64,000 nucleotides of DNA, from positions 62,001 to 126,000 of the IMG/VR virus record IMGVR_UViG_3300024262_006558; one strand, given 5' to 3'. Of this stretch, positions 22,096 to 60,322 are shown piece after piece (positions within the stretch are counted from its first letter, which is position 1; every line of letters begins with the position of its first letter). The notes under the pieces are model-generated. The model ran no database searches, was not told the origin of the DNA, and saw only the letters and a list, made by a program, of their open reading frames with translations. A program made the translations under genes and the position numbers.

Positions 22096-22584
22096 ATGGC
22101 AGATATGTTTAGACCAGTTCCAATTGAACAGGAACCTAAAAGAAAAAATAGGTTTGCTCTTGAATTTCCTACCGAGCTTGGTATTGATCAATTCATAGTG
22201 CAAACTTCTGGGAAACCAAAGTTAAATATTAACCCAGTGGAAATACCATATATGAATACTAGTACTTGGGTTGCTGGTAGATCTGTATGGCAATCGATTG
22301 ATGTAACATTCATCGATGTTATCGGACCCTCTACTACTCAAAAGCTTATGGAATGGATTAGACTTCATTTCGAATCAGCTACTGGTCGTATGGGATATGC
22401 TGTTGGTTACAAAAAGAACTTAGTATTAAAAGCGCTTGATCCGACTGGTATAGAGGTGGAAAAATGGACTCTTATCGGCTCAATGATTACTAATATCGAT
22501 TTTGGTGGATTTGACTACGGCGATGATGGACTTGCTGACATCACAATAAGTGTTCAAATGGACAGATGTTTATTAGCAGCTTAA
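22096..22584 (+). CDS. Tail tube protein (T4 gp19-like)
   Basis: PKRKNRF...EIPYMN...AGR..WQ.I.VTF...LDPTG..VEKWTL...D.G.FDY pattern, 162 aa. Confidence 0.85.
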   Translation: MADMFRPVPIEQEPKRKNRFALEFPTELGIDQFIVQTSGKPKLNINPVEIPYMNTSTWVAGRSVWQSIDVTFIDVIGPSTTQKLMEWIRLHFESATGRMGYAVGYKKNLVLKALDPTGIEVEKWTLIGSMITNIDFGGFDYGDDGLADITISVQMDRCLLAA

Positions 22585-24890: not shown

Positions 24891-25181
24891 TTAGCCAACT
24901 CTCGCTAAGTGCTTTCTAAAATCTTCGTTTTCCTTTTCCATAAATTCAGTAGCCTTTTGCATACATTCAATTAGGTTGTGGTTCTTGGTTTCTATTATTT
25001 CAGCAACTCCTTTCCATTGTCTTACTTCAGATGGGCTACCTTTGTCGCTTACATTTATGAAATAACCATCTTCATAGTCATACATAAAACAGATATTTCT
25101 TTCTTTTGCCAACGCTTCAAAACGTGTTACAACATTTTGTATAGTGCATGGCTTAATTTCGTTTTCTTTATTAGTGTTCAT
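24891..25181 (-). CDS. Cassette hypothetical protein (starts in loop, reads through the site)
   Basis: CTIQNVVTR is encoded by the hairpin arm and GTT. Confidence 0.65.
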   Translation of the reverse strand: MNTNKENEIKPCTIQNVVTRFEALAKERNICFMYDYEDGYFINVSDKGSPSEVRQWKGVAEIIETKNHNLIECMQKATEFMEKENEDFRKHLARVG

Positions 25182-25263: not shown

Positions 25264-25473
25264 CTAGCAACTACCATATCTGAAACTCCCAAATCCTTCA
25301 CCTTCGTATTCAGAATCAATAAAGAACCCTAATTTATCAAGTTCCTCAATATCATCCTTGCTCACTAATTCAGGGTCAATAGCTACATAAAAGTAGTCGT
25401 GTTCACAATGGCTTGGGTTTCTTGGGTTGCCATATTTTAAAAGTATTTGTAATGCTTTAATTAAATCTTCCAT
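25264..25473 (-). CDS. Cassette hypothetical protein
   Basis: MEDLIKALQILLKYGN...HCEHD. ATG at 25473. Confidence 0.7.
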   Translation of the reverse strand: MEDLIKALQILLKYGNPRNPSHCEHDYFYVAIDPELVSKDDIEELDKLGFFIDSEYEGEGFGSFRYGSC

Positions 25474-25612
25474 CTTTCTATTTAGTTTGTGGCTTAAATT
25501 CCGTACTACACACAACAATGTATATAGTTTATAAGCCTAATTAATATTATTTTTCAATTTGTAAATTTGTGCTATGGCTTACAAAACCATATACTCAACG
25601 TTATGCTTAACA

Positions 25613-25960: not shown

Positions 25961-26185
25961 TTAAGAAACGAACTCATTAAATTCATCTTCCTTAATTTCT
26001 CGTGCTTTACTATTCGTTACACCACCATACTTTTTAGATACCTTTAAAACCGCATCATCTTCATTTAATGCAAATGTGTAAGCACTCGAAGGTGTACAGT
26101 AAGGTCTTGATACCCTATAAAATTTAACTGTGCCTAACATTGTGTATAGCACATTGCTTTCGGTGTTTTTTGATACTGTATTCAT
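25961..26185 (-). CDS. Cassette hypothetical protein (reads through site)
   Basis: VLYTMLGTV is encoded by the arm and GTT. Confidence 0.6.
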   Translation of the reverse strand: MNTVSKNTESNVLYTMLGTVKFYRVSRPYCTPSSAYTFALNEDDAVLKVSKKYGGVTNSKAREIKEDEFNEFVS

Positions 26186-26257
26186 AGTTTTAAGTTTTTT
26201 ATTTTCAATTTAAGTTAGTGAGGCAACGCGCCATACACTCGTTCGTTATAGTGCATA

Positions 26258-26440
26258 TTATTGCTTTACTTCTTTACCACAATCAAAACACTCGTATTCT
26301 GTTTCGCTTATTGGTTTTTGCATACTTGGCTGCACACAATCGCAATAAAACGTACCCTTCGGCACAATAACATTATCTATATTTAATAGCTTGTTTTCTG
26401 CTTCCTTTTTACCTTCGTTGTACATTTGAAAATCATTCAT
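26258..26440 (-). CDS. Cassette Cys-rich small protein (reads through site)
   Basis: LNIDNVIVP crosses the site. Contains CxC...CxxC. Confidence 0.6.
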   Translation of the reverse strand: MNDFQMYNEGKKEAENKLLNIDNVIVPKGTFYCDCVQPSMQKPISETEYECFDCGKEVKQ

Positions 26441-26698: not shown

Positions 26699-26792
26699 TT
26701 TATCTATTTTGTTTTTAGTTAATTAACCGCACTAAAATATAACACGGTATAAAATGGCATTAAAACGCCATCTATACAACCGTTATATGCAA

Positions 26793-28076: not shown

Positions 28077-30458
28077 TTAAAAATCTTCGAACGAAGCGCC
28101 AGTTGGTAAAACTTGAAAGGTCAAGTCGATGAATTCAACTGATGGAGTTGGTTGTAATTGAATCTTACCTACCAATGTGTTTCTATCAATTGTATCTGTA
28201 GAGTTCAAAGTGTCATCCATTACCACATTAAAAGCATTTAAACCTCTTTGGTTTTGGATATTCAATAATATTGGCTCCACTTTCGCTAAGAATTGATCTC
28301 TTAACGTCTGATCGTTTTGTTCGAAAAGCAATGTTAAAGATGCTGCAGCTACTAATCTTCTTACTTGAAGTAATAATCTTCTTACGTTGATTCTATCAAG
28401 TGAAGAACTTTGTCTCTGTAGTGTCTTCTGACCAAAGATAACGATACCTTGTTGAACGAAAGATGCAATTGGATTGACTCTTCCTTGGTAAAGCGTATCT
28501 CTGTTTCCAGCGTTCATTTTCACATCAACTTTGTTTACAAAGTCTCCTAACAAACCTCTGTTGATACCTGCTGGCGCGAACCATGGGTTAGCAACATTAT
28601 CTGTAAGCGCGATTGCTTGAACAGCTCCCATTGTAGGTGCTTGGTAAGTATAAACACTATTGTTAGCGTCTATAATTTGAATCCAAGGCCAATAAGTAGC
28701 AGCATAACTAGAATCAATTCCTGTTGAATCTAATATAGACACAATCTCTTCTGGAGTTCCCTTAACTTCACCAGAGGTAAGTCTTGGAGCATCCATTATG
28801 TATAAGCTATCAGCTCTATCTTCAACCATTTCAAGCGCAGAATTAATTAACTCAAAGTTATTTGAGAAATCTATACCTGGCGTTGCGAATAGGTTGATGT
28901 CAACCTCTTCTGGATTAGAAAATGTTCCAATACCTGCTTTAAATGAATTTGAGTTATCTATTTTAGATGCTGCAAATTCTTCATATTGCTCTTCATAAGA
29001 ATACAATTTATCCCATCCATCAAAACCGCCTGCTGGCACTAATGTGAATTTCAATTTATTTCTATCAATTCTAGTTCCTGCAGCATTAGTATAAGCTGAC
29101 ATTGAAATTTTATCTCCAGTAGTAAATCCTGTTGGCGCAGCGCTTTCCATATGGAAACCGTTAACAGTTGTCATTCCGCTAGAAACCCCTCCTTGATAAG
29201 AGAAAAAATCTTTCTCAAGAGTCTTGATAGAATTCTGGAAAGAAATCTCATTTTGAGTTTGAGAAGTGTATCCAAGCTCAGTAAGACCTAAATAAGATCT
29301 AAAGATTGAATCTCCTGACAAATATGTAGTTTTATAAAATAAATCTGGAGCAGTTGTTCCAGAAACTCCATTATTTCTAATGCTATATCCTCTAAAACCA
29401 CCTGGTACAGTGTTAGATGGTATATTTTGAGCCATCTCTACAGTTATGTAAGAAGATCTCCTTGGGTAATCCTCATCAGTTGTACCAATTACTCTTGCAA
29501 TGTAACCGTTTGAAGTTTCATCTAACGAAAGATTAGAGAATCTTTCAAGAGCTGTTTGGCTAGCTGTTTTGTCTGTATCATTAAAGCTTCTTACTAGAAG
29601 ATCGAATGTATAGTTGTTAATGTCAATGTTTTGAATTGATATCTTGATTTCTTCATTTGCAGAATCACCATCAGAAATTGTTCTAACCTTGAAAAGGTTT
29701 CTAACTTCATTTCCTATAACTCTAGAAACAACCCATGGAGTAACTGCGTCAGAATAACTGTCAGCATAATCTGTATAAGAAGCATCATTTGCGTATACTA
29801 AAGTAGGACTCAAATCTGACAACTCACCTCTTGCAAAAGATTCTCTCACATAATGAGGAAAAATACTTTCAACATAAAGATCAATTTCCCCTGTTATAAC
29901 ATCTGGACTTTCACCTAACGCTCTAACAATGTAATCATCTCTAGTTTCATCTAAAGATACTGTCATTCCGCTTCCAGTAATCCCTGTCATAGGACCTGTA
30001 GTTGCGCTTAATACGAATGAACTAAGAGGTGTACTACCTGTAGTTAACCCCCCTATAGTCACGTCACTTTCCTCATTGAATGAGAACTCTCCGCTAATTT
30101 GATTTGCTTTACTTCTAAGAACTGCTAATACTGATCCAGCATTAGTTGATCCTGTTCCAGCAACGATTAACCACGCTCCTGAGTTAGTAAAACCATTTTG
30201 TCCCAAAATTCTTGTGACCGTTAACTCATTGGACTGTGCCAAGAATGCGTTCGCAACATAAGGGAGTGAAAATTTAGGGTTTGTGCTTCCAAATCTTGCA
30301 AGGTACTCATCGGTACTTGCAATTTTTACTGGTTCGAAAGCAGGCCCTTTTAACGTTTTACCAACAAGACCCAATCTTGTGATACCAACTCTTGATGCAA
30401 AGATGGTAAAATCTTGTTCTCTAGTAAAAACACCTGGTGATAAGAATACTGTAGCCAT
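28077..30458 (-). CDS. Tail sheath protein (T4 gp18-like)
   Basis: SPGVFTREQD N-terminus; YAATYWPW, PWFAPAG.NRG, NPI, GQKTLQ...DRINVRRL C-terminus. Confidence 0.95.
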   Translation of the reverse strand: MATVFLSPGVFTREQDFTIFASRVGITRLGLVGKTLKGPAFEPVKIASTDEYLARFGSTNPKFSLPYVANAFLAQSNELTVTRILGQNGFTNSGAWLIVAGTGSTNAGSVLAVLRSKANQISGEFSFNEESDVTIGGLTTGSTPLSSFVLSATTGPMTGITGSGMTVSLDETRDDYIVRALGESPDVITGEIDLYVESIFPHYVRESFARGELSDLSPTLVYANDASYTDYADSYSDAVTPWVVSRVIGNEVRNLFKVRTISDGDSANEEIKISIQNIDINNYTFDLLVRSFNDTDKTASQTALERFSNLSLDETSNGYIARVIGTTDEDYPRRSSYITVEMAQNIPSNTVPGGFRGYSIRNNGVSGTTAPDLFYKTTYLSGDSIFRSYLGLTELGYTSQTQNEISFQNSIKTLEKDFFSYQGGVSSGMTTVNGFHMESAAPTGFTTGDKISMSAYTNAAGTRIDRNKLKFTLVPAGGFDGWDKLYSYEEQYEEFAASKIDNSNSFKAGIGTFSNPEEVDINLFATPGIDFSNNFELINSALEMVEDRADSLYIMDAPRLTSGEVKGTPEEIVSILDSTGIDSSYAATYWPWIQIIDANNSVYTYQAPTMGAVQAIALTDNVANPWFAPAGINRGLLGDFVNKVDVKMNAGNRDTLYQGRVNPIASFVQQGIVIFGQKTLQRQSSSLDRINVRRLLLQVRRLVAAASLTLLFEQNDQTLRDQFLAKVEPILLNIQNQRGLNAFNVVMDDTLNSTDTIDRNTLVGKIQLQPTPSVEFIDLTFQVLPTGASFEDF

Positions 30459-37638: not shown

Positions 37639-39297
37639 TTATGCTGCACCGTAAGTGTTAACATTATCGATAATTACAACTCCGTAGAAACGGTTATTAA
37701 CCATTTTCTTAGCGTATCTAGTCATGATACCTTTTCTTGGAGTGAAATCATTTGGATCGTAGATAGTTTGAGTCAATTGTAAAGGAATGTATGGAGCGTA
37801 GATATATCCAGCTTCAAGGAACGTAGACCCTTTGTGACCAACTAATACAATTTGAGAAGGTAAATAAGGATCTTTAAATACAGAGTATCTGTTTCCTAAG
37901 TTACCAATTTTTTCAACACCTAAGTTGTACTTCTCCATATCAGGAGCTGCAGATCCAGCAACGTGGAAGTAATCCAAGTCATCAAATATTGCACCCGCCT
38001 CAGCAGAACATACAATCCAGTTAGCACCACCTCTTAAAGTAGCCTTGTGAATTTGAGCTGAAAGTTCATTTACTCTAGTAATAAGAGTTTGGTTCCAGTC
38101 TTTTTGCGTTCCGAAGAAGTTAGCATTGTTAGAAAGACCATTGTAATCCCATCTTGCTCTGAATGGAGCTTGGTTGATTAAGTCAATGATGATTTCTCTA
38201 TCAACCTCTGCAGCAATGTGCTCAGAAAGAAGAGCTGTTAACTCAGCTTCTGCATCGATAGAGTGGTATGCTTCAAGATCTTGCGCTAATTCTGGAGTCC
38301 AGTGAGCTCTAAGTTTTCTTGTGATAGTTGTTACAGTTACAGAAGAGAATCTGATTGTAAGTTCAGCCATTTCAGACTTACCTTCAAGGTCGTTAAACAC
38401 TTCGTAAGCAGGAGTTATAGCAATATTGAATGCCGCACCAGAATTACCAGCTCCGTCATTTATATTTGCAGAACTAAAGCTTGAAGAATCAACTCCAGCA
38501 GGTCTCAAGTCAAGAATAACATCAGCGAACTGAGAGCTAAACATATCTTGAGTATAATCTTGGATTTGGTGGTAATAAGGTACACCTTGACCAGCTGCTA
38601 CAACTAATAAGTTCTGAGAACCTGAAGAGTAGTAGATGTCAGTTCCAGCAGAGAATCTTAAAGTAGCAGAAGACTGTTGCTTAGAGATATCAAAACCTTG
38701 ACCTAAATCGAAAGTAGTAGATAAAATACCATTTGTCCATCCAGAAGCGTTAAGCGCTGCTGCAGTACCAACTACAGTTTCTCCTGTCCCGAAAGAAAGA
38801 TCAAAACCCTTGTTGTTATAAAATCTTTCATATGCAGATGTGCTTGCAAATGTAGGACCAGGCTTTTCAGTAGCAGTGTTTGCAGGTGCAACTCTCTGTA
38901 CTCTAGCCAATTCTTGTTGTCTAGTTAATTGATTTTTTTGAGTGTTATCAGCACCATTCCAAGATACTCTCGCATCAAGATAAAATAACAATCCAGAAGG
39001 AAGTGCTAAAGGTTGTACAGAAACTAACTCGTTAGCTAATAATCTTGAGAATACTCTTCTCACGATTGGAAAAGCTACAGTATCAAAACGACCTGCAGAT
39101 GTATCAAGAGTAACCTCTTGTAACATGTGAGATGCTTGATTTTCTAGAAGTTGAGCGATGTTCGCTTTCTCCATTCCTTGAAGTCCTTTTAAAAGACCAG
39201 AGTTATCCCAAGAAGCCACGATAGACTTTCTTTGCTCTGCAAGGCTTTTAATGTTGGTTAAACCAACTTTGCCGCTTGTTAATAATTCGCTTGCCAT
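37639..39297 (-). CDS. Major capsid protein (T4 gp23-like)
   Basis: VQPL..PSGL.F, TRKLRA.WT.ELAQDL.A.H.IDAEAEL..LLSE.I..E.DREII, YAPYIPL, FTP..GIMTRY. Confidence 0.97.
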   Translation of the reverse strand: MASELLTSGKVGLTNIKSLAEQRKSIVASWDNSGLLKGLQGMEKANIAQLLENQASHMLQEVTLDTSAGRFDTVAFPIVRRVFSRLLANELVSVQPLALPSGLLFYLDARVSWNGADNTQKNQLTRQQELARVQRVAPANTATEKPGPTFASTSAYERFYNNKGFDLSFGTGETVVGTAAALNASGWTNGILSTTFDLGQGFDISKQQSSATLRFSAGTDIYYSSGSQNLLVVAAGQGVPYYHQIQDYTQDMFSSQFADVILDLRPAGVDSSSFSSANINDGAGNSGAAFNIAITPAYEVFNDLEGKSEMAELTIRFSSVTVTTITRKLRAHWTPELAQDLEAYHSIDAEAELTALLSEHIAAEVDREIIIDLINQAPFRARWDYNGLSNNANFFGTQKDWNQTLITRVNELSAQIHKATLRGGANWIVCSAEAGAIFDDLDYFHVAGSAAPDMEKYNLGVEKIGNLGNRYSVFKDPYLPSQIVLVGHKGSTFLEAGYIYAPYIPLQLTQTIYDPNDFTPRKGIMTRYAKKMVNNRFYGVVIIDNVNTYGAA

Positions 39298-40890: not shown

Positions 40891-41562
40891 TTATATATTT
40901 TTCCAGAAATCGTCGTTTAACATATTATTTAACTTCTGGTGATATTCGTAGATACTTCCACTATCGTCCTTGGCTAATTTAAAAATCTTTTCGGCCTCTG
41001 GAGTAAGAGGGACCATTCCTCGCTTAGCATCCACCCCTTCCTTGAACATGTATGCTCCAGGTGTTGAAGGTGATGAAACAAAGTCAAATGCAATTAATTC
41101 AAAATCTTCTTGAACAACATCATTTCCACCTTTTGAAGTTACAGAACCCACCCCTCTTGATGAGATACCTAAAGTTCCTCCCATCTTTAAAAGTGATTTT
41201 AATTTTTTACCTGCATCATCTTCTGGATCAACTACTACTTTGCCATAAAGAGTCTTCTCTTGCCACCACATATCTGTTACCAAATGTGATACGTTAGCTA
41301 AACTAACTACAGCTGAATCTGGATGATCTAACTCTCCGTAAGCAACGCCTTTTTCTACACATTCCTGCATATAAGTTTCAGCTTGACGCTTAAGTATGTC
41401 GTATGGATAAATTCTACCGTTCCTATTTAGTGTGTCGGCTTTTTGTAAAATTCCAACTAAAGTAATAAGCCCGCCCTGCTCAATCGCTTCTTTAATAAGT
41501 TGCGGATCAGCTTTGAACTCGAAATATTCCGAGATGATGTATTTTTCCGATTTTGTGCTCAT
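40891..41562 (-). CDS. Prohead protease (T4 gp21-like)
   Basis: N.NGRIYP, GELDHP, VSH, GISSRGVGS, DFVSSPS. Start MSTKSEK follows the TATTTATA motif. Confidence 0.93.
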   Translation of the reverse strand: MSTKSEKYIISEYFEFKADPQLIKEAIEQGGLITLVGILQKADTLNRNGRIYPYDILKRQAETYMQECVEKGVAYGELDHPDSAVVSLANVSHLVTDMWWQEKTLYGKVVVDPEDDAGKKLKSLLKMGGTLGISSRGVGSVTSKGGNDVVQEDFELIAFDFVSSPSTPGAYMFKEGVDAKRGMVPLTPEAEKIFKLAKDDSGSIYEYHQKLNNMLNDDFWKNI

Positions 41563-41685
41563 GTCTATAAATATTGGTTTTTTTTCTAATTCACGTATTT
41601 TAGAATTAAAACAAAAAAATAAATCCATTTGCATGGATTTATATAGACAATTGCTAGGAACTGTTAAAAAATATGTGCTACAAAG

Positions 41686-45145: not shown

Positions 45146-45193
45146 AATGTCTTTTCTTTGAATTTAACACATTCTTTATCATATGTAAAGCGA

Positions 45194-46288
45194 TTATCGC
45201 TTTACATAGCATTTGTTAGAAGAAATTATATTTACAGGATAAAAGTAAGACACGCCTTCAAACTTTAATTCTTGTACTTCTTTACCTTTAGAGACTAATA
45301 AACTATCTACATTTTTAGGGTCAGACAATGACTCTACTAACCCTTTTGGAGCATCGACTTTTCTATAAGCCCTCTCATTCATAGCAAGTTCTACCATTTT
45401 AATCTCATTCTCCTCAGCTTCAGATATTTCAGTTTTTACACTATTTCTCCCCATAGCATCTTGCGCGTTATCTGCAATAATTAAATTCTCTTCTGTTTTT
45501 TTAGGAGACTCTTGCATAGGCATTTCTGGAGTTGGAGTTTCAGTTTCTGGAGCCTGCATTTGAAAGCTAGTATTTAACTGAGCTCTCAAAGCGTCTTCAA
45601 TATACTTCTTCATCATACCTTCTATATTAATGGAACTTAGATCCATAGTAATAGGTCCAGCTGAATTACTTCCAGTAACCTGCAAGTTAGCTGATCCGTC
45701 TGCGTATGGATTCTGCTTCTCTCCAGGGATTGAAATATTATTAATTCTCTTTTCCTCGAATTTAGAAGTTCCAGCTAACGGGTCAAAGGATATATCTCCA
45801 ATCTCTTCGAATTTAGCAACATATACTTTCGCTTTCCTTTTACCCTCCTCAATCCAGCATTGATGTATTGATCTCCTAATATCAGGATTATCAAAAGTTC
45901 TGAATTGTTTGTTTGAAAGATTTACCCCACCTTCACTTAACTCGTTCATATCAAATACTACAAATTGATCTGGCTCTATTTTATCTAGAAAAGAAGGCAT
46001 TTGAGGCGTGTATCCTTCCACGTTAGCTTCAGTTGAGAAATCAGTATTATTAGGATCTTCTCCCCCTCCAGGTAGAGAGTCAACTACCCCACCGTCCTCC
46101 ACATCCTCTTGTACAGCAGCGCTTTCTTCAGTGTCCACTTCCTCTTCTAAAACAGGAGTGTTAATTTTTTCAGATACTGTTTTTCGAACCTGATCAATGA
46201 ATTCTTCGTTGAAAACAGTGTTCATTCCCATTTCTTTTATTTGTGAGGCTATCTCAGTAGCTAGTTGTTCTTTGGATAGATTTTTCAT
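45194..46288 (-). CDS. Acidic hypothetical protein (possible head-internal protein)
   Basis: 364 aa, acidic, with late-type motif upstream. Confidence 0.6.
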   Translation of the reverse strand: MKNLSKEQLATEIASQIKEMGMNTVFNEEFIDQVRKTVSEKINTPVLEEEVDTEESAAVQEDVEDGGVVDSLPGGGEDPNNTDFSTEANVEGYTPQMPSFLDKIEPDQFVVFDMNELSEGGVNLSNKQFRTFDNPDIRRSIHQCWIEEGKRKAKVYVAKFEEIGDISFDPLAGTSKFEEKRINNISIPGEKQNPYADGSANLQVTGSNSAGPITMDLSSINIEGMMKKYIEDALRAQLNTSFQMQAPETETPTPEMPMQESPKKTEENLIIADNAQDAMGRNSVKTEISEAEENEIKMVELAMNERAYRKVDAPKGLVESLSDPKNVDSLLVSKGKEVQELKFEGVSYFYPVNIISSNKCYVKR

Positions 46289-46388: not shown

Positions 46389-47138
46389 ATGGCTAAAGGT
46401 AAAAACCTATCGAGAGAACAAAAAGAAGAGTTTGATTTATATCAAATGTCTCAAGAGTTAAAGGAAAAAACTCATAAACGTATTAAGGAAATTAATTATA
46501 AACCTGGAATAAAAGCCAAGAATCCCTCCCAAGAAAAGCTTATACAGAAAATAAAAAATAACAATATAACGTTCGTCTCTGGACCAGCTGGTGTTGGTAA
46601 AACTTTAATCGCACTTAAAGCGGCTATGGATGCTATGAAAAATAATGAAAAAATCACTCGACTAATCTTTACAAAACCTATTGTGGAAGCTGATGAGTCT
46701 ATGGGGTTTCTTCCAGGAGATATGTCTGAAAAGATAGCTCCATACATGTCTTCATATTATTCAAACATGGAGAAATTAATAGGTTCATCCCCTACTCAAT
46801 GGATGATTACAAACAAAATAATACAAGAAGAACCGCTTAATTTCATGAGAGGTAACACGTATGATGATGCTATAATGATCTTAGATGAAGCTCAAAATAC
46901 TACAATTAAAGGGCTAAAATTATTCATATCAAGATTAGGAGAAAATTCTAAAATGATTGTTATGGGAGACGCTGATCAGACAGATCTCAAACTTAAAGGT
47001 AATGAAAAGTCTGGATTACAAGATGCTTTTGAAAGGTTTCAGGGATTACAAGGCGTTACCACTCACGAGTTCGAGGAGAAGGATATAGTTAGAAACAGCA
47101 TACTTATAGAGGTTATGAAAAGGTATAAAAACAAATAA
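46389..47138 (+). CDS. phoH: PhoH-family ATPase
   Basis: GPAGVGKT, GFLPG, MRG.T, ILDEAQN, SRLGENSK...GD..Q.DL, DIVR. Confidence 0.95.
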   Translation: MAKGKNLSREQKEEFDLYQMSQELKEKTHKRIKEINYKPGIKAKNPSQEKLIQKIKNNNITFVSGPAGVGKTLIALKAAMDAMKNNEKITRLIFTKPIVEADESMGFLPGDMSEKIAPYMSSYYSNMEKLIGSSPTQWMITNKIIQEEPLNFMRGNTYDDAIMILDEAQNTTIKGLKLFISRLGENSKMIVMGDADQTDLKLKGNEKSGLQDAFERFQGLQGVTTHEFEEKDIVRNSILIEVMKRYKNK

Positions 47139-47407: not shown

Positions 47408-47440
47408 AAAAAAGGATAGTCATTGACTATCCTTTTTTTT
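47408..47440. terminator. Bidirectional terminator between convergent genes
   Basis: aaaaaaggatagtca-t-tgactatcctttttt. Confidence 0.8.
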
Positions 47441-49229: not shown

Positions 49230-49874
49230 ATGAAAAAGCCAACTATAAACATATATTCAATAACAAGCTCTAATCAAAATTCATGTATATACATAGGAGT
49301 AACTTCTAGGAGTTTAAAAATTAGACTTTCTGAACATATTAGAAATAATACTGGAACATGTTTCAAACAATGGTTGGAGCAAGAAATTAGCCAAGGTCAT
49401 GAAATTTTTATTAACACACTAGATGTTGTATATAAAAAAGAGTCTAAATTTTGGGAAGGGTTTTGGATATGTAACTTTAAATCCTGGGGGTTTACAACCC
49501 TAAATTCAAATATTGGAGGAGGTGGCCCTCTTTATATGACTACACAACAAAAAGAGAAAATGAGTCTTTGTAAGAAGGGTGTGAAAAACCCTTTTTATAA
49601 TAAGAAGCACACAAAAATTTCTAAAGAAAAAATAAGCTGTAACAACTCCAGGTATTGGAAAGGTAGAAAATTAAGACCAGAAATGGTTAGAAAACTTTCT
49701 GAATCCAACTCTATACCAGTGGATCAATTTGATAAATTAGGGAACTTTATAAAGCATTGGAGCTCTATAACAGAGGCTTCAAACATATTGGGTATAGACT
49801 CAAGTTCAATCGTTAAAGTGTTAAAAAACAAAAGAAAAAAAGCAGGAAACTATGGATGGAAATATAAAAAATAG
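49230..49874 (+). CDS. GIY-YIG homing endonuclease with NUMOD3/NUMOD1 domains
   Basis: IYSI...IYIGVT...RL.EH, NPFYNKKHT..SKEKIS, SITEAS..LGI....I..V......AG.Y.WKY. Confidence 0.85.
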   Translation: MKKPTINIYSITSSNQNSCIYIGVTSRSLKIRLSEHIRNNTGTCFKQWLEQEISQGHEIFINTLDVVYKKESKFWEGFWICNFKSWGFTTLNSNIGGGGPLYMTTQQKEKMSLCKKGVKNPFYNKKHTKISKEKISCNNSRYWKGRKLRPEMVRKLSESNSIPVDQFDKLGNFIKHWSSITEASNILGIDSSSIVKVLKNKRKKAGNYGWKYKK

Positions 49875-54824: not shown

Positions 54825-54967
54825 TGATTTAGGTAGTGATATTAATCTGAATCACTTTTGAATTTTGAAGGACCTAAAATGAGGAAAATGTTAAACGATA
54901 AAGGTAGTAAATGATTATCTAGATAATCATTTAATAAATAGAATTAAACGTATTTATAAAAAAGATT

Positions 54968-56701: not shown

Positions 56702-56738
56702 TGTTAAGTATATGAGTAGGATTTTAAACGATTAAGTA

Positions 56739-56876
56739 ATGAGCAGTAAAAAGCACGATAAATTAAACAACGCAGAAGTTATAAAGGTGTTAGAAGAAAT
56801 AACAACGGAAGAGAAGTTAGCAATGTTTGGAATAACTAAACCAAGTACAGATGATAAAGATAAGCCGAAAAAGTAA
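56739..56876 (+). CDS. 45-aa peptide inside a hairpin loop
   Basis: MSSKKHDKLNNAEVIKVLEEITTEEKLAMFGITKPSTDDKDKPKK, between arms 56708-56729 and 56877-56898. Confidence 0.5.
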   Translation: MSSKKHDKLNNAEVIKVLEEITTEEKLAMFGITKPSTDDKDKPKK

Positions 56877-57051
56877 GTTTAAAATATTACGCATATACCT
56901 TGTTGTGAAGCGTTTTATGGGCGAGATGTTTACTTTTGAGTGCCACCATAAAAAATGCGATGGTAGGTGCTCTTACTTAGGTGATGATAGGCAGACAGGA
57001 GTTTGGATTAGCTTATATGAATGCAATAAGTGCGGAACTGAATGGATGTAA
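56851..57051 (+). CDS. Cassette Cys-rich protein (reads through site)
   Basis: ILRIYLVVKR is encoded by the arm and GTT; C-terminal CxxC. Confidence 0.55.
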   Translation: MIKISRKSKFKILRIYLVVKRFMGEMFTFECHHKKCDGRCSYLGDDRQTGVWISLYECNKCGTEWM

Positions 57052-57073: not shown

Positions 57074-57382
57074 ATGACATTTGAAGAAATAGAAACAAAC
57101 CCTGATCTTTCAAACAATTCAGAGCAGGAATATGTTAGACTTAAAAAAAGAAACGTAATGATCAGAAAGTCATTCTACCATAGCTACAATAAATCGGTCT
57201 GCGAGTATGATGTAAACGGTCATCCTACCAAATGCGAATGTGGATGCGAGGATTTCGATCAAGATATCATAGAAATGGTCGAAGGTCATATTCATGAATA
57301 TGACCTTACATGCTCAAATGAAGGCTGTAGAAAAATAGTTGGATACTGGTCTTATGGATCTTGGCAGTCTTTAGAATTGTAA
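57074..57382 (+). CDS. Hypothetical Zn-binding protein
   Basis: CECG...C...C...GYWSYG.W. Confidence 0.65.
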   Translation: MTFEEIETNPDLSNNSEQEYVRLKKRNVMIRKSFYHSYNKSVCEYDVNGHPTKCECGCEDFDQDIIEMVEGHIHEYDLTCSNEGCRKIVGYWSYGSWQSLEL

Positions 57383-57825: not shown

Positions 57826-58183
57826 TCTTATTTACATGCTGTTAATAAAACTAGGGCAACGTTTAACGTTTTCTAGTAGATTATAATATGCACTCTACCA
57901 TGTGCCCGACATCGGCAACATGGTTTTATGTTGAATTAAATAGGGGTGGGATTAAATGAACGTCTGCACTAGTCGAGTTGAAAATATACTTGCAAGTTGG
58001 TACTAAAGCCAACTATCCTAGCCAACGGGCTTTGCGGTTCACCCTATTTAATGTAACGCTTTGTGTATGGTTAGTAAACCCTTGCACAGACTTTCAAAAT
58101 TAGTATAAACCTTGGTGGGTTTATTACCTACAATGTTAAATGTATGCTTTGCTAGAGATTACGGACAGATAACCACTAAAACA

Positions 58184-58489
58184 ATGGACTTAAAAAAGAG
58201 AATAGAAGAAATTACACAAAACGGAACGCTTGAAAGCGGTGAACAAATAACCTATGTAGATACCGATGACCTTTACTTGTTGCTGAATGAAGTAAACTCT
58301 AGTGAAGTCATACATCTTGTTAGCGATTGGAATGATTGGGTATATGGATCACCTACATCAATAATAGATGGGAGTCATATTGAAGTTATGTGGTCTGACA
58401 ACTCAGTCACTAAAGTTTTTTATGAATGGAGAAGTAAATCTATGGCACATAAGTTACCACCAATAAAGTGGAGGTATTCTAATAGCTAA
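58184..58489 (+). CDS. Cassette hypothetical protein (first 45 codons lie within the hairpin)
   Basis: MDLKKRIEE...SSEVIHLVSDW. GTT at 58319; the TAA overlaps the closing TAAC. Confidence 0.65.
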   Translation: MDLKKRIEEITQNGTLESGEQITYVDTDDLYLLLNEVNSSEVIHLVSDWNDWVYGSPTSIIDGSHIEVMWSDNSVTKVFYEWRSKSMAHKLPPIKWRYSNS

Positions 58490-58581
58490 CGGTTTGGCTA
58501 TGTGCTGAACGTAGAGCAACGGAGTTTTGCATATAGCTAGTGTTATATGCTTTTAATTATTAACAACTAAAGATTATAAAA

Positions 58582-58932: not shown

Positions 58933-59036
58933 TTGCATATAACGGCATCCTGTATGATGTCGTGAAACGAAGTGGAATGCATTCATACACCGTGTTGTGT
59001 GTAGTGCGGATTATTAACTGATAACAAAATTAAAAG

Positions 59037-59435: not shown

Positions 59436-59514
59436 CATTATTTATATTACGTGTTGTGCGCACGTTTTAATTGCGACACAACGCTAAGTATAACAAACGG
59501 AAAATTTACGACTT

Positions 59515-59673: not shown

Positions 59674-59791
59674 ATTTTATGTTTTGTTATACAATGTTGT
59701 ATGGCAAAGCGTACCGTTTTAATGGCATACAACGGTTGAGTATAAACGTAGTGTTTAACTGAACTTAATTTGAAACACAAAACTTAAAATT

Positions 59792-59992
59792 ATGATAAAA
59801 AGATTGATTGAAAAACTGAAAACATTACGTTTATACTTTGTTAGAAAACGTTGTTTTGAGGTGTATTTCACAGATACCAAAAGTGGAAAGGAAGGAAGAA
59901 TTAATTTATGGGTGAAAGATGTCGATGAAGTAGAACCTTACTTTGAAAAACACTTTCCACATTTGGAATTATATGATATAGGAGAATGTTGA
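59792..59992 (+). CDS. Cassette hypothetical protein (reads through site)
   Basis: TLRLYFVRKR is encoded by the arm and the GTT at 59840. Confidence 0.65.
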   Translation: MIKRLIEKLKTLRLYFVRKRCFEVYFTDTKSGKEGRINLWVKDVDEVEPYFEKHFPHLELYDIGEC

Positions 59993-60102
59993 TTACAATG
60001 TTTTCTAACGACCTGTGTAAAATTTCGTGTGAGGCACGAGCAATGAATTTTAAACCTTGTTAGCGTTTCGTTTTTGAGCGTTGGCATTTAAAAACTAAAA
60101 AG

Positions 60103-60264
60103 ATGAAAGTAAGTATTCAGTTCACAAAAGAAGAATTAAGATTATTAAAAAAGGCGTTATTTTTTGGAATAACACATAATGAAAACAACCAAGAAGCAAA
60201 TAAAATGAATGAATTAGATGCGAAAATGAATTTACTGTGTGCGTTGGCAGAAAATGAACGCTAA
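60103..60264 (+). CDS. 53-aa cassette protein
   Basis: MKVSIQFTKEELRLLKKALFFG...; the TAA overlaps the TAAC of the terminal site. Confidence 0.6.
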   Translation: MKVSIQFTKEELRLLKKALFFGITHNENNQEANKMNELDAKMNLLCALAENER

Positions 60265-60322
60265 CACGAAAATAAAGATAAGCGTTAAGCGACTCAAAGA
60301 GTTATCTTTTATTTTCTGTTAT
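60263..60322 (+). repeat. Terminal hairpin site of array B, inverted copy of 24565..24624
   Basis: aacacgaaaataaagataagcgttaagcgactcaaagagttatcttttattttctgttat. Confidence 0.95.

What the first reader, a model, noticed from the sequence alone, without database searches (positions are those of the whole stretch)
58131..58490. ORFs that start in one unit's loop and read through the GTT: built-in translational fusion or domain shuffling
Seen: at least six ORFs begin inside a hairpin loop and are translated across the right arm and the GTT, giving a recurrent arm-encoded peptide. These are EVIHLVSD (58184), LRIYLVVKR (56851), LRLYFVRKR (59792), TIQNVVTR (25181), NIDNVIVP (26440) and, in another frame, LYTMLGTV (26185). 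In five of the six, GTT is the in-frame Val codon. Inference: recombination at G|TT would join an upstream start and N-terminus to a different downstream body, creating chimeric proteins or switching start-less cassettes on or off depending on their neighbour.
Basis: partly seen in the sequence, partly recalled or inferred. Interest (0 to 1): 0.85.

Follow-up and report, generated by a model that had tools for sequence, protein, structure and literature searches.

The report
Phage hairpin units that swap protein N-termini
In the small-gene regions of this T4-like marine phage, conserved hairpin units sit at gene borders, some enclose a gene's start, and relatives show that N-terminal pieces and protein bodies have been re-paired at the hairpin's right arm.

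Summary
All six peptides are at the stated places and GTT is an in-frame Val in five. Five of the six ORFs start between a 7-nt left arm and its complement, which lies exactly 3 nt before GTT.

The unit is [T/C]AAC-N3-6-L''(7)...L'(7)-N3-GTTR. It occurs 12 times in 14 kb of small-ORF DNA, against about 0.17 expected.

The focal ORF 58184-58489 shares only its last 59 codons (98.9% nt identity) with TARA contigs. There a different 22-residue N-terminus is fused, and homology starts at the first base of the right arm (58310). Three further swaps map to the same box.

The strict integron reading is not supported:
- Junctions also fall at ...AAC| and inside leaders.
- No recombinase was found in the window.
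- The units fold better on the sense strand.

The units resemble T4-type PeSL boundary cassettes. They are also the same hairpin type as a site in the Polaribacter phage P12002L region where attC clusters were reported.

Verdict: a new variant of a known kind. Interest is moderate to high.

The parts
58140..58324 (+). Focal unit. L'' ATGTATG is at 58140-58146. The 162-nt loop holds the leader and ATG 58184. L' CATACAT is at 58309-58315, the spacer CTT follows, and R' GTTAGC is at 58319-58324.
   Evidence: perfect 7 of 7 arm pair with L' exactly 3 nt before GTT; the outer AAC box is missing (AATGTTAA instead)
58184..58489 (+). Focal ORF (101 aa). The N-module is 58184-58309 and the exchangeable body is 58310-58489. 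Its stop codon lies inside GCTAAC (58485-58490).
   Evidence: relatives P0002 and P0003 share only residues 43-101; the DNA homology boundary is at 58310
58487..58545 (+). Compact unit after the focal ORF: TAAC, spacer, a 10-bp stem with two G.T pairs, spacer AGT, GTTA. It is followed by a conserved leader up to ATG 58582.
   Evidence: 86.7% identical to L029 2206-2307, where an extra 244-nt gene cassette precedes it
56708..56905 (+). Unit with L'' GTATATG (56708) and L' CATATAC (56892), GTT at 56902. The loop holds ORF 56739-56876, and ORF 56851-57051 reads through the right arm.
   Evidence: one A fewer in the run 56868-56872 gives a single 103-aa ORF
59740..59843 (+). Unit with a 19-bp long-range stem. 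L'' GTATAAA is at 59740 and L' TTTATAC at 59830, with GTT at 59840. It encloses ATG 59792 of ORF 59792-59992.
   Evidence: z = -3.19; 0 of 200 shuffles fold as well; conserved in L036
25131..25253 (-). Unit with AAC 25253, L'' TTGTATG 25244, L' TATACAA 25143 and GTT 25133-25131. It encloses ATG 25181 of ORF 24891-25181.
   Evidence: (z = -3.25); about 93% identical to L042 up to GTT, then divergent
26136..26248 (-). Unit with TAAC 26248, L'' GTGTATG 26238, L' TATACAC 26148 and GTT 26138-26136. It encloses ATG 26185 of ORF 25961-26185. Here GTT is out of frame.
   Evidence: 16-bp stem with G.U pairs, z = -2.35
26258..26440 (-). ORF with NIDNVIVP (26383-26360). No left arm was detected. The body is homologous to Panino CDS0080 from this motif onward.
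59696..59733 (+). Widely conserved hairpin with the loop motif CGTTTTAAT. Other copies are at 24665-24622 (-), a diverged one at 59453-59482 (+), and a related one at 26785-26743 (-).
   Evidence: the 19-mer is exact in 17 IMG/VR contigs; the conserved part ends at ...CAAC|; a site with the same loop motif is in P12002L
59734..60265 (+). Two-gene segment of 532 nt bounded by AAC. It is absent from the otherwise identical arrangement in the minus-strand cluster (junction at 24624-24622).
   Evidence: the flanks are 100% and 98.3% identical and overlap by just the 3 nt AAC
60006..60062 (+). Compact unit CTAAC...GTTAGC. Positions 60014-60086 are 98.6% identical to an intergenic stretch of Maribacter phage Panino.
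60262..60321 (+). 60-nt fully paired unit TAACA...TGTTA. Its twin is at 24624-24565 (-).
58940..59036 (+). Compact unit plus a conserved leader with exactly 52 nt from the ATAC box to the ATG. Equivalents lie at 26750 to ATG 26698 and at 25525 to ATG 25473 on the minus strand.

Best explanation
The units are conserved boundary hairpins of the hyperplastic small-gene regions of a T4-like phage. The host is probably in the Flavobacteriia; that is an inference.

Each unit has an outer inverted pair ((G)CTAAC, which often contains the upstream stop codon, and GTTAG/GTTGT). It also has an inner 7-nt or longer pair placed about 4 nt and 3 nt inside the outer pair. Most units are compact hairpins followed by a conserved roughly 40-nt leader and the next ATG. 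In a subset the two arms are 60-190 nt apart. The loop then carries the leader, the ATG and 12-50 codons, so the ORF is translated across the right arm and GTT.

Shown:
- The architecture is real and far above chance.
- The arm sequences differ between units but stay complementary.
- The sense strand folds better than the antisense strand.
- N-terminal modules and bodies occur in different combinations in related phages, with breakpoints at the right-arm/GTT box.
- Whole cassettes come and go between two ...AAC boxes.

Inferred:
- The hairpins work mainly in the mRNA, as terminator, stabiliser or translation-start structures.
- Because they are short conserved islands between unrelated genes, they also serve as exchange points for phage recombination, as proposed for PeSLs.
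- A common reading phase (GTT = Val; GTTAG is a stop in one other phase) keeps swapped modules compatible.
For: Architecture:
- Strict units occur 12 times against about 0.17 expected. Controls give 1 in 100 kb.
- The L''/L' pairs differ between units yet stay complementary: CTGTAAA/TTTACAG, TTGTAAT/ATTACAA, GTGTAAC/GTTACAC, GTATAAA/TTTATAC, ATGTATG/CATACAT.
- Long-range stems fold with z = -2.3 to -3.25.

Strand:
- The sense strand folds 5.2 kcal/mol better than the antisense strand in 20 of 24 units (Wilcoxon p = 1.8e-4). Control coding segments give -0.35 +/- 3.9.
- 9 of the 15 single non-Watson-Crick positions are G.T on the sense strand, and none is A.C or C.A.

Swaps:
- Focal ORF against P0002/P0003.
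- L042.
- One N-module on two bodies in L029.
- Panino CDS0080.
- P0017/P0018 have a nearly unchanged N-terminus on a roughly 30% identical body.

Cassette gains and losses bounded by AAC: 532 nt; 244 nt, flanked by GCTAACG.

The N-module is translated: 3 of 4 substitutions between L029 and L031 are synonymous.

Reading phase: GTT is in frame in 18 of 24 read-through long-loop units across all loci.

T4-like context: gp23, gp21 protease, sheath, gp19 and PhoH.

Precedent: PeSLs are boundary stem-loop cassettes of T4-type hyperplastic regions with scattered crossover points and mini-circles (PMC2839356, PMC4122927).
Against: - No sigma-70-type promoter is associated with the units: 12 matches against 19 expected. 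The promoter half of a PeSL is therefore not demonstrated.
- Several junctions rest on only 3-7 nt of shared sequence (AAC; ATACA). That is short for ordinary homologous recombination and would suit a site- or structure-specific enzyme.
- The outer and inner boxes keep a sequence consensus, which pairing alone does not require. This hints at a protein that recognises them.
- No transcript, protein or recombination-intermediate data exist for this phage.
- Some counted units and junctions are not independent because the loci are homologous.
Confidence: 0.55

Rival explanations
1. True integron-type system. The units are attC sites that fold as single-stranded DNA. A tyrosine recombinase, encoded by the phage elsewhere in the contig or by the host, exchanges cassettes at G|TT (or AA|C on the strand shown). 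Start-less bodies are then expressed from the start codon carried in the upstream attC loop.
For: - The layout matches attC: R''-spacer-L''...L'-spacer-R', with core GCTAAC/GTTAGC close to the RYYYAAC/GTTRRRY pattern as given in PMC9892861.
- A unit of the same type, with the CGTTTTAAT loop and R' GTTAGGC, lies between two methyltransferase genes of Polaribacter phage P12002L. That region is where Qi et al. reported an attC cluster. One of their P12002L sites was recombined by IntI1 (PMC9892861).
- Two clean indels have junctions confined to AAC or GCTAACG.
- One swap diverges right after GTT.
- Maribacter phage Panino encodes a 185-aa catalytic-domain-only tyrosine recombinase.
Against: - No recombinase was found among 39 window ORFs.
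- Junctions occur at both ends of units and also inside them: the 5' edge of L', 17 nt past GTT, and in leaders.
- The L029/window indel keeps the downstream hairpin rather than the upstream one, the opposite of what excision at G|TT predicts.
- The coding strand folds better, whereas integrons use the bottom strand (PMC9892861).
- The spacers are about 4 and 3 nt. From my own recollection, which I did not check here, classical attC spacers are about 5 and 6 nt.
- The Panino recombinase has no close relative in IMG/VR.
Confidence: 0.2
2. Nothing special at the DNA level. The small proteins share a common linker peptide (L-x-[IL]-[HY]-[LF]-V-S/R). The swaps are ordinary rare illegitimate recombination events that selection kept because the linker separates two domains.
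For: - The 59792 family is colinear in 15 homologues, and a distant huge-phage member (L038, record LR756504.1) has the N-terminus without any unit.
- GTT is in frame in most read-through units.
Against: - The same box occurs in non-coding spacers with the same geometry.
- The left arm lies upstream of the start codon and covaries with the coding right arm.
- The stems fold significantly better than shuffled sequence, and better on the sense strand.
- Breakpoints at 98.9% against 0% identity coincide with the box edge.
Confidence: 0.1
3. Invertible switches. The inverted arms flank a segment carrying the leader, ATG and N-terminus. A recombinase flips the segment, turning the downstream body on or off.
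For: Inverted repeats of 11-19 bp bracket exactly the start-bearing segment.
Against: - No locus in any collection showed a loop in the opposite orientation. All same-strand HSPs are colinear.
- No invertase was found in the window.
- Compact units with loops of 17-31 nt would be too short to invert; this last point is my inference.
Confidence: 0.05

Closest known systems
PeSL (promoter-early stem-loop) cassettes of T4-type phages (Arbiol et al. 2010, PMC2839356; Comeau et al. 2014, PMC4122927)
   Same: - Short conserved stem-loop modules sit between small accessory ORFs in the hyperplastic regions of T4-like genomes.
- Indels and replacements of ORFs are flanked by them.
- Crossover points are scattered within the module.
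- The module runs up to the start codon of the next gene.
   Different: - No sigma-70-type promoter could be recognised here.
- The stems have a two-box attC-like geometry with conserved AAC/GTT ends.
- The two arms can be split around the translation start, so exchange points lie inside ORFs and give N-terminal swaps.
- The same units occur in unrelated phage types (the siphovirus-sized P12002L and the 77-kb Panino).
Integron attC sites and attC clusters without integrase (CALINs) reported in virulent phages, including Polaribacter phage P12002L (Qi et al. 2023, PMC9892861)
   Same: - R''/L''...L'/R' inverted-repeat layout with AAC...GTT ends.
- Arrays of short, co-oriented cassettes.
- Stop codons lie inside the left box.
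- P12002L carries units of exactly this type, one of them between its methyltransferase genes.
   Different: - No integrase in the window.
- Junctions are not confined to G|TT.
- The sense strand, not the bottom strand, is the better folder.
- Loops contain leaders, start codons and N-terminal codons.
- I could not run the attC model used by integron finders.
Fused integron cassettes (PMC4670013, abstract seen) and translation starting in attI1 (my own recollection, not checked here)
   Same: An ORF body can depend on translation signals that lie in the neighbouring recombination site or cassette.
   Different: Those are described as rare accidents or a single site. Here it is a recurrent arrangement with a shared reading phase across many units and several phages.
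T-even internal-protein locus, where variable bodies are shuffled between related phages (Repoila et al. 1994, as cited in PMC4122927)
   Same: A T4-type phage locus in which small variable proteins are exchanged between relatives.
   Different: I found no evidence that the N-modules here are capsid-targeting or cleaved sequences. They are diverse; only the junction box is shared.

Membership tests
Integron attC site | Outer inverted core RYYYAAC ... GTTRRRY | tested here: met
   (G)CTAAC / GTTAGC or [TC]AAC / GTTR flank the units. The match to the full 7-mer consensus is only partial.
Integron attC site | Second inverted pair (L''/L') separated from the core by short unpaired spacers | tested here: met
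   7-nt L boxes with spacers of 3-6 nt and exactly 3 nt. There are 12 strict cases against 0.17 expected.
Integron attC site | The bottom strand (complement of the cassette ORF) is the better-folding, recombinogenic strand | tested here: not met
   The sense strand is 5.2 kcal/mol more stable in 20 of 24 units under RNA parameters. DNA parameters were not run.
Integron attC site | Cassette boundaries lie only at G|TT of R' | tested here: not met
   Junctions also lie at ...AAC| of the left box, at the 5' edge of L', 17 nt past GTT, and in leaders.
Integron (complete) | An IntI-type tyrosine recombinase and an attI site next to the array | tested here: not met
   No recombinase domain in 39 window ORFs. 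The rest of the 388-494 kb contig could not be read.
Integron attC site | Recognition by the attC covariance model (IntegronFinder / HattCI) | not testable with these tools
   The model is not available here. Rfam gave no hit.
PeSL | Located between small ORFs in the hyperplastic regions of a T4-like genome | tested here: met
   gp23, gp21 protease, sheath, gp19 and PhoH are in the window. The units lie in two small-ORF clusters.
PeSL | Stem-loop followed by an early sigma-70-like promoter, Shine-Dalgarno sequence and ATG | tested here: inconclusive
   A stem-loop, a conserved leader and an ATG are present, with an exact 52-nt spacing in three copies. There are no sigma-70 hexamers. The host promoter type is unknown.
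PeSL | Indels and replacements between relatives are flanked by the elements | tested here: met
   A 532-nt and a 244-nt cassette indel, and four N-terminus/body swaps.
PeSL | Mini-circle intermediates | not testable with these tools
   This needs inverse PCR or read-level data.

The most novel reading that the evidence does not exclude
A phage cassette system in which translation starts and N-terminal peptides are carried inside the loops of attC-like hairpins. Start-less protein bodies would be expressed as in-frame fusions with whichever unit lies upstream. A universal junction phase (GTT = Val) would keep all modules interchangeable. A dedicated site- or structure-specific enzyme would cut at the AAC/GTT boxes. 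This would amount to exon-shuffling-like combinatorial protein assembly in virulent phages of Flavobacteriia.
Probability: 0.25. Interest if true: 0.85.

Novelty: new variant of a known kind. Interest (0 to 1): 0.62.

Why it matters
Boundary hairpins are already thought to let T4-type phages trade whole accessory genes, and attC-like sites have been reported in virulent phages. Here the same kind of element straddles the start of translation. The exchange unit can therefore be part of a protein, an N-terminal module or a body, and not only a whole gene.

That would be a simple, general way for phages to make new small proteins. It also links two literatures (PeSLs and phage attC clusters) through one family of hairpins found in at least three unrelated marine phage types.

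Two cultured phages, P12002L and Panino, carry the units. The mechanism is therefore directly testable.

Tried and rejected
- CRISPR-repeat or RNA anti-CRISPR idea for the GTTG...CAAC hairpin. A scan of 185,579 species genomes found no arrays. It returned 9 loci, about six of them chance 19-mers without a left arm. Rejected.
- Known RNA families and tRNAs: none.
- The hairpin in isolated phages by blastn: no match. The family link to P12002L emerged only from the structure-based scan.
- Sigma-70 promoter scan: no enrichment.
- A Bacteroidota-type -33/-7 promoter could not be recognised by eye.
- The homologue search for ORF 56851-57051 found nothing.
- The metagenome scan with the focal ORF returned only the same phage, on a 494-kb contig. 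Relatives of the focal N-module were therefore not found.
- Relatives of the Panino tyrosine recombinase in IMG/VR: none.
- AlphaFold2 of the focal protein gave a mean pLDDT of 43.6. It cannot say whether the junction is a domain border.
- My first permissive unit search (one mismatch, loose spacers) had too high a background to be useful for the window alone. I replaced it with the strict form.

Full report
**What the window is**

The window carries T4-type core genes:
- major capsid protein gp23 (37639-39297, minus strand)
- prohead protease gp21 (40891-41634, minus)
- tail sheath (28077-30458, minus)
- tail tube gp19 (22096-22584, plus)
- PhoH (46389-47138, plus)
- a GIY-YIG/NUMOD homing endonuclease (49230-49874, plus)
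- two blocks of sugar-modifying enzymes

The window is identical to part of IMG/VR contig IMGVR_UViG_3300024262_006558 (388,594 bp) and to a 494-kb metagenome contig.

There are two clusters of small ORFs. One is on the plus strand at about 56.2-60.4 kb. The other is on the minus strand at about 24.3-27.2 kb.

**The observation**

The DNA under them shares ATAYAC-N1-4-TGTTR. This motif is not enriched in the window as a whole. However, 10 of about 14 hits lie on the sense strand of the two clusters.

It has an outer inverted pair. The left member is (G)CTAAC and often contains the stop codon of the upstream gene. The right member is GTTAG or GTTGT. It also has an inner inverted pair of 7 nt or more, placed about 4 nt and exactly 3 nt inside the outer pair.

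In its strict form the unit is [TC]AAC-N3-6-X7 ... revcomp(X7)-N3-GTTR. It occurs 12 times in 14 kb of cluster DNA:
- window plus cluster: 3
- window minus cluster: 1
- L029: 5
- L031: 2
- L036: 1

Shuffles give about 0.17. The 100 kb of control strands give 1.

The inner arms differ from unit to unit but stay complementary. That is covariation.

Most units are compact hairpins with loops of 17-31 nt. In others the arms are 60-190 nt apart. The loop then holds a conserved A-rich leader, an ATG and 12-50 codons.

- 56708/56892
- 58140/58309
- 59740/59830
- 25244/25143
- 26238/26148

NIDNVIVP shows no left arm. The long-range stems are predicted by free folding and beat shuffles, with z = -3.19, -3.25, -2.35, -2.27 and -2.86.

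There are three caveats:
- The focal unit has only the 7-bp inner pair and lacks the AAC box.
- ORF 56851 is probably the downstream part of a gene split by one extra A in the run 56868-56872.
- The similarity between 56851 and 59792 is a 24-nt piece of the right arm (20 of 24), not a whole shared N-terminus.

Yes, for the focal ORF. A search of 5.8 billion proteins found two relatives besides the window's own protein: P0002 and P0003, both 81 aa. They match only residues 43-101 of the focal protein, beginning at IHLVSD. They carry an unrelated 22-residue N-terminus.

At the DNA level, L029 1781-1962 equals window 58310-58491 at 98.9% identity, with nothing alignable upstream. Position 58310 is the first base of the right arm ATACAT, 10 nt before G|TT.

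Further cases:
- **ORF 24891-25181 against IMG/VR contig L042.** The unit, leader and first 17 codons are about 93% identical in DNA. The sequences diverge immediately after GTT. Protein identity is 16 of 17 before the break and 7 of 28 after it.
- **One N-module on two bodies within L029.** The module is a leader plus MI[TE]KEEY...YE[EK]QL. It is joined to two unrelated bodies, and its DNA homology ends at GTTAGC|. This module is translated: 3 of 4 substitutions between L029 and L031 are synonymous.
- **ORF 26258-26440 against CDS0080 of the cultured Maribacter phage Panino.** The two align only from LNIDNVIVPKGT onward.
- **The 59792 family.** Its 15 homologues are mostly colinear across the box. 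Even so, P0017 and P0018 keep an almost unchanged N-terminus on a body only about 30% identical, and the DNA break lies 17 nt past GTT.

**Where exchange happens**

I listed all homology ends among the window clusters, L029, L031, L036, L042 and Panino. They cluster on unit landmarks but not on a single bond:
- at or within AAC of the left box
- at the 5' edge of L'
- at GTT or GTTAGC
- at the end of L''
- inside leaders
- at start or stop codons

Two indels are especially clean.

The first is within the window. In the minus cluster the CGTTTTAAT hairpin and the 60-nt hairpin are adjacent. In the plus cluster the same two elements are separated by 532 nt carrying two ORFs. The flanks are 100% and 98.3% identical, and the two alignments overlap by only the 3 nt AAC.

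The second is between window and L029. L029 has an extra 244-nt gene between two copies of GCTAACG. Excision at G|TT, as in integrons, would have kept the upstream hairpin. The window has the downstream one.

**Which strand folds**

The sense strand of 24 units is on average 5.2 kcal/mol more stable than the antisense strand (20 of 24; Wilcoxon p = 1.8e-4). Control coding segments show no bias. Nine of the 15 single non-Watson-Crick positions in the inner box are G.T on the sense strand, and none is A.C or C.A. This points to a structure that works in the mRNA or on the coding DNA strand. It is the opposite of the bottom-strand preference described for integron attC sites (PMC9892861).

In several units the right arm can pair in two ways. 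It can pair with the left arm. It can also pair with sequence just downstream, giving a small hairpin followed by a T-run. I noted this possibility but did not test it.

**Reading phase**

Across all loci, 24 long-loop units have an ORF that starts in the loop and reads on for at least 25 codons. GTT is a codon in 18 of them; the other two phases account for 2 and 4. GTTAG gives a TAG stop in one phase, so the fair expectation is nearer one half than one third. Some cases are also homologous to each other. Even so, the bias is what one expects if modules must stay compatible after exchange.

**Relation to what is known**

The closest described elements are the PeSLs of T4-type phages. They are composite stem-loop plus promoter cassettes between small ORFs of hyperplastic regions. 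They flank indels and replacements, their crossover points are scattered within the element, and they form mini-circles (PMC2839356, PMC4122927). The present units share the setting and the behaviour. I could not find a sigma-70-type promoter in them.

The second close relative is the integron attC site. Qi et al. (PMC9892861) reported attC clusters without an integrase in virulent phages, including Polaribacter phage P12002L. They showed that one of its sites is recombined by IntI1.

My structure scan of P12002L found units of exactly the present type. One lies between two of its methyltransferase genes: GCTAAC, then N6, a 7-nt arm, a loop containing CGTTTTAAT, the complementary arm, ATT and GTTAGGC. 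The scan also found ORFs that start in a loop and read through GTT in frame (gp42 and gp37). I could not confirm that this unit is the published site.

The same loop motif marks a hairpin that is exact over 19 nt in 17 IMG/VR contigs and present three to four times in the window. A 73-nt unit is 98.6% identical between the window and Maribacter phage Panino. One family of hairpins is therefore shared by unrelated phages, apparently those of marine Flavobacteriia.

**Conclusion**

The specific mechanism, an integron-like cut at G|TT, is not supported by the junction map, the strand bias or the gene content of the window. It is not excluded, because several junctions rest on only 3-7 nt of shared sequence and most of the genome was out of reach.

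My best reading is PeSL-like boundary hairpins with attC-like geometry. They act in RNA and double as exchange points, and in the split form they make in-frame N-terminal swaps possible.

Noticed in passing
window 60014-60086; L033 3001-3072 (PP540027.1 42376-42447): A 73-nt intergenic hairpin unit is 98.6% identical between this T4-like phage and the otherwise unrelated 77-kb Maribacter phage Panino. In Panino it sits in a small-ORF cluster inside the head gene block.
   Followed up: partly
window 59696-59733 (+), 24665-24622 (-), 59453-59482 (+), 26785-26743 (-); L001-L018, L021, L025, L028, L045 30046-30008: A hairpin with the invariant loop motif CGTTTTAAT. The 19-mer CGTTTTAATGGCATACAAC is exact in 17 IMG/VR contigs. 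An optional inner hairpin shows compensatory changes. The function of the conserved loop is unknown.
   Followed up: partly
window 56865-56876: The run of five A at 56868-56872 separates ORF 56739-56876 from the frame of ORF 56851-57051. One A fewer gives a continuous 103-aa ORF. This could be an assembly error, a real frameshift or slippage.
   Followed up: partly
window 57826-58183: An unusually long non-coding stretch (358 nt) lies before the focal ORF. It holds a G-rich/C-rich closing pair (about 57943-58043) and another unit at 58054-58139. There is no tRNA or Rfam hit.
   Followed up: no
window 57282-57307, 54908-54933, 47408-47438, 45182-45208: Four perfect or near-perfect 26-31-nt palindromes were found by self-BLAST. 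The one at 57282-57307 is inside ORF 57074-57382.
   Followed up: no
window 1-22000 (minus strand): A series of large ORFs (up to 963 aa) is built from diverged repeats with 207-, 222- and 372-nt spacing. They are presumably fibre or baseplate proteins.
   Followed up: no
window 49230-49874: A free-standing GIY-YIG/NUMOD homing endonuclease gene lies at the start of the glycosyltransferase block.
   Followed up: no
window 25473 and 25518: The mechanical ORF list starts ORF 25264-25518 at a TTG inside the unit. The conserved 52-nt spacing from the ATAC box points to ATG 25473 as the real start.
   Followed up: partly
L035 31797-32354 (PP540027.1 71797-72354): Panino encodes a 185-aa protein consisting only of a tyrosine-recombinase catalytic domain. 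It has no close relative in IMG/VR.
   Followed up: partly
L038 (LR756504.1, 636-kb record): A distant homologue of ORF 59792-59992 sits in a 636-kb record without any flanking unit.
   Followed up: partly
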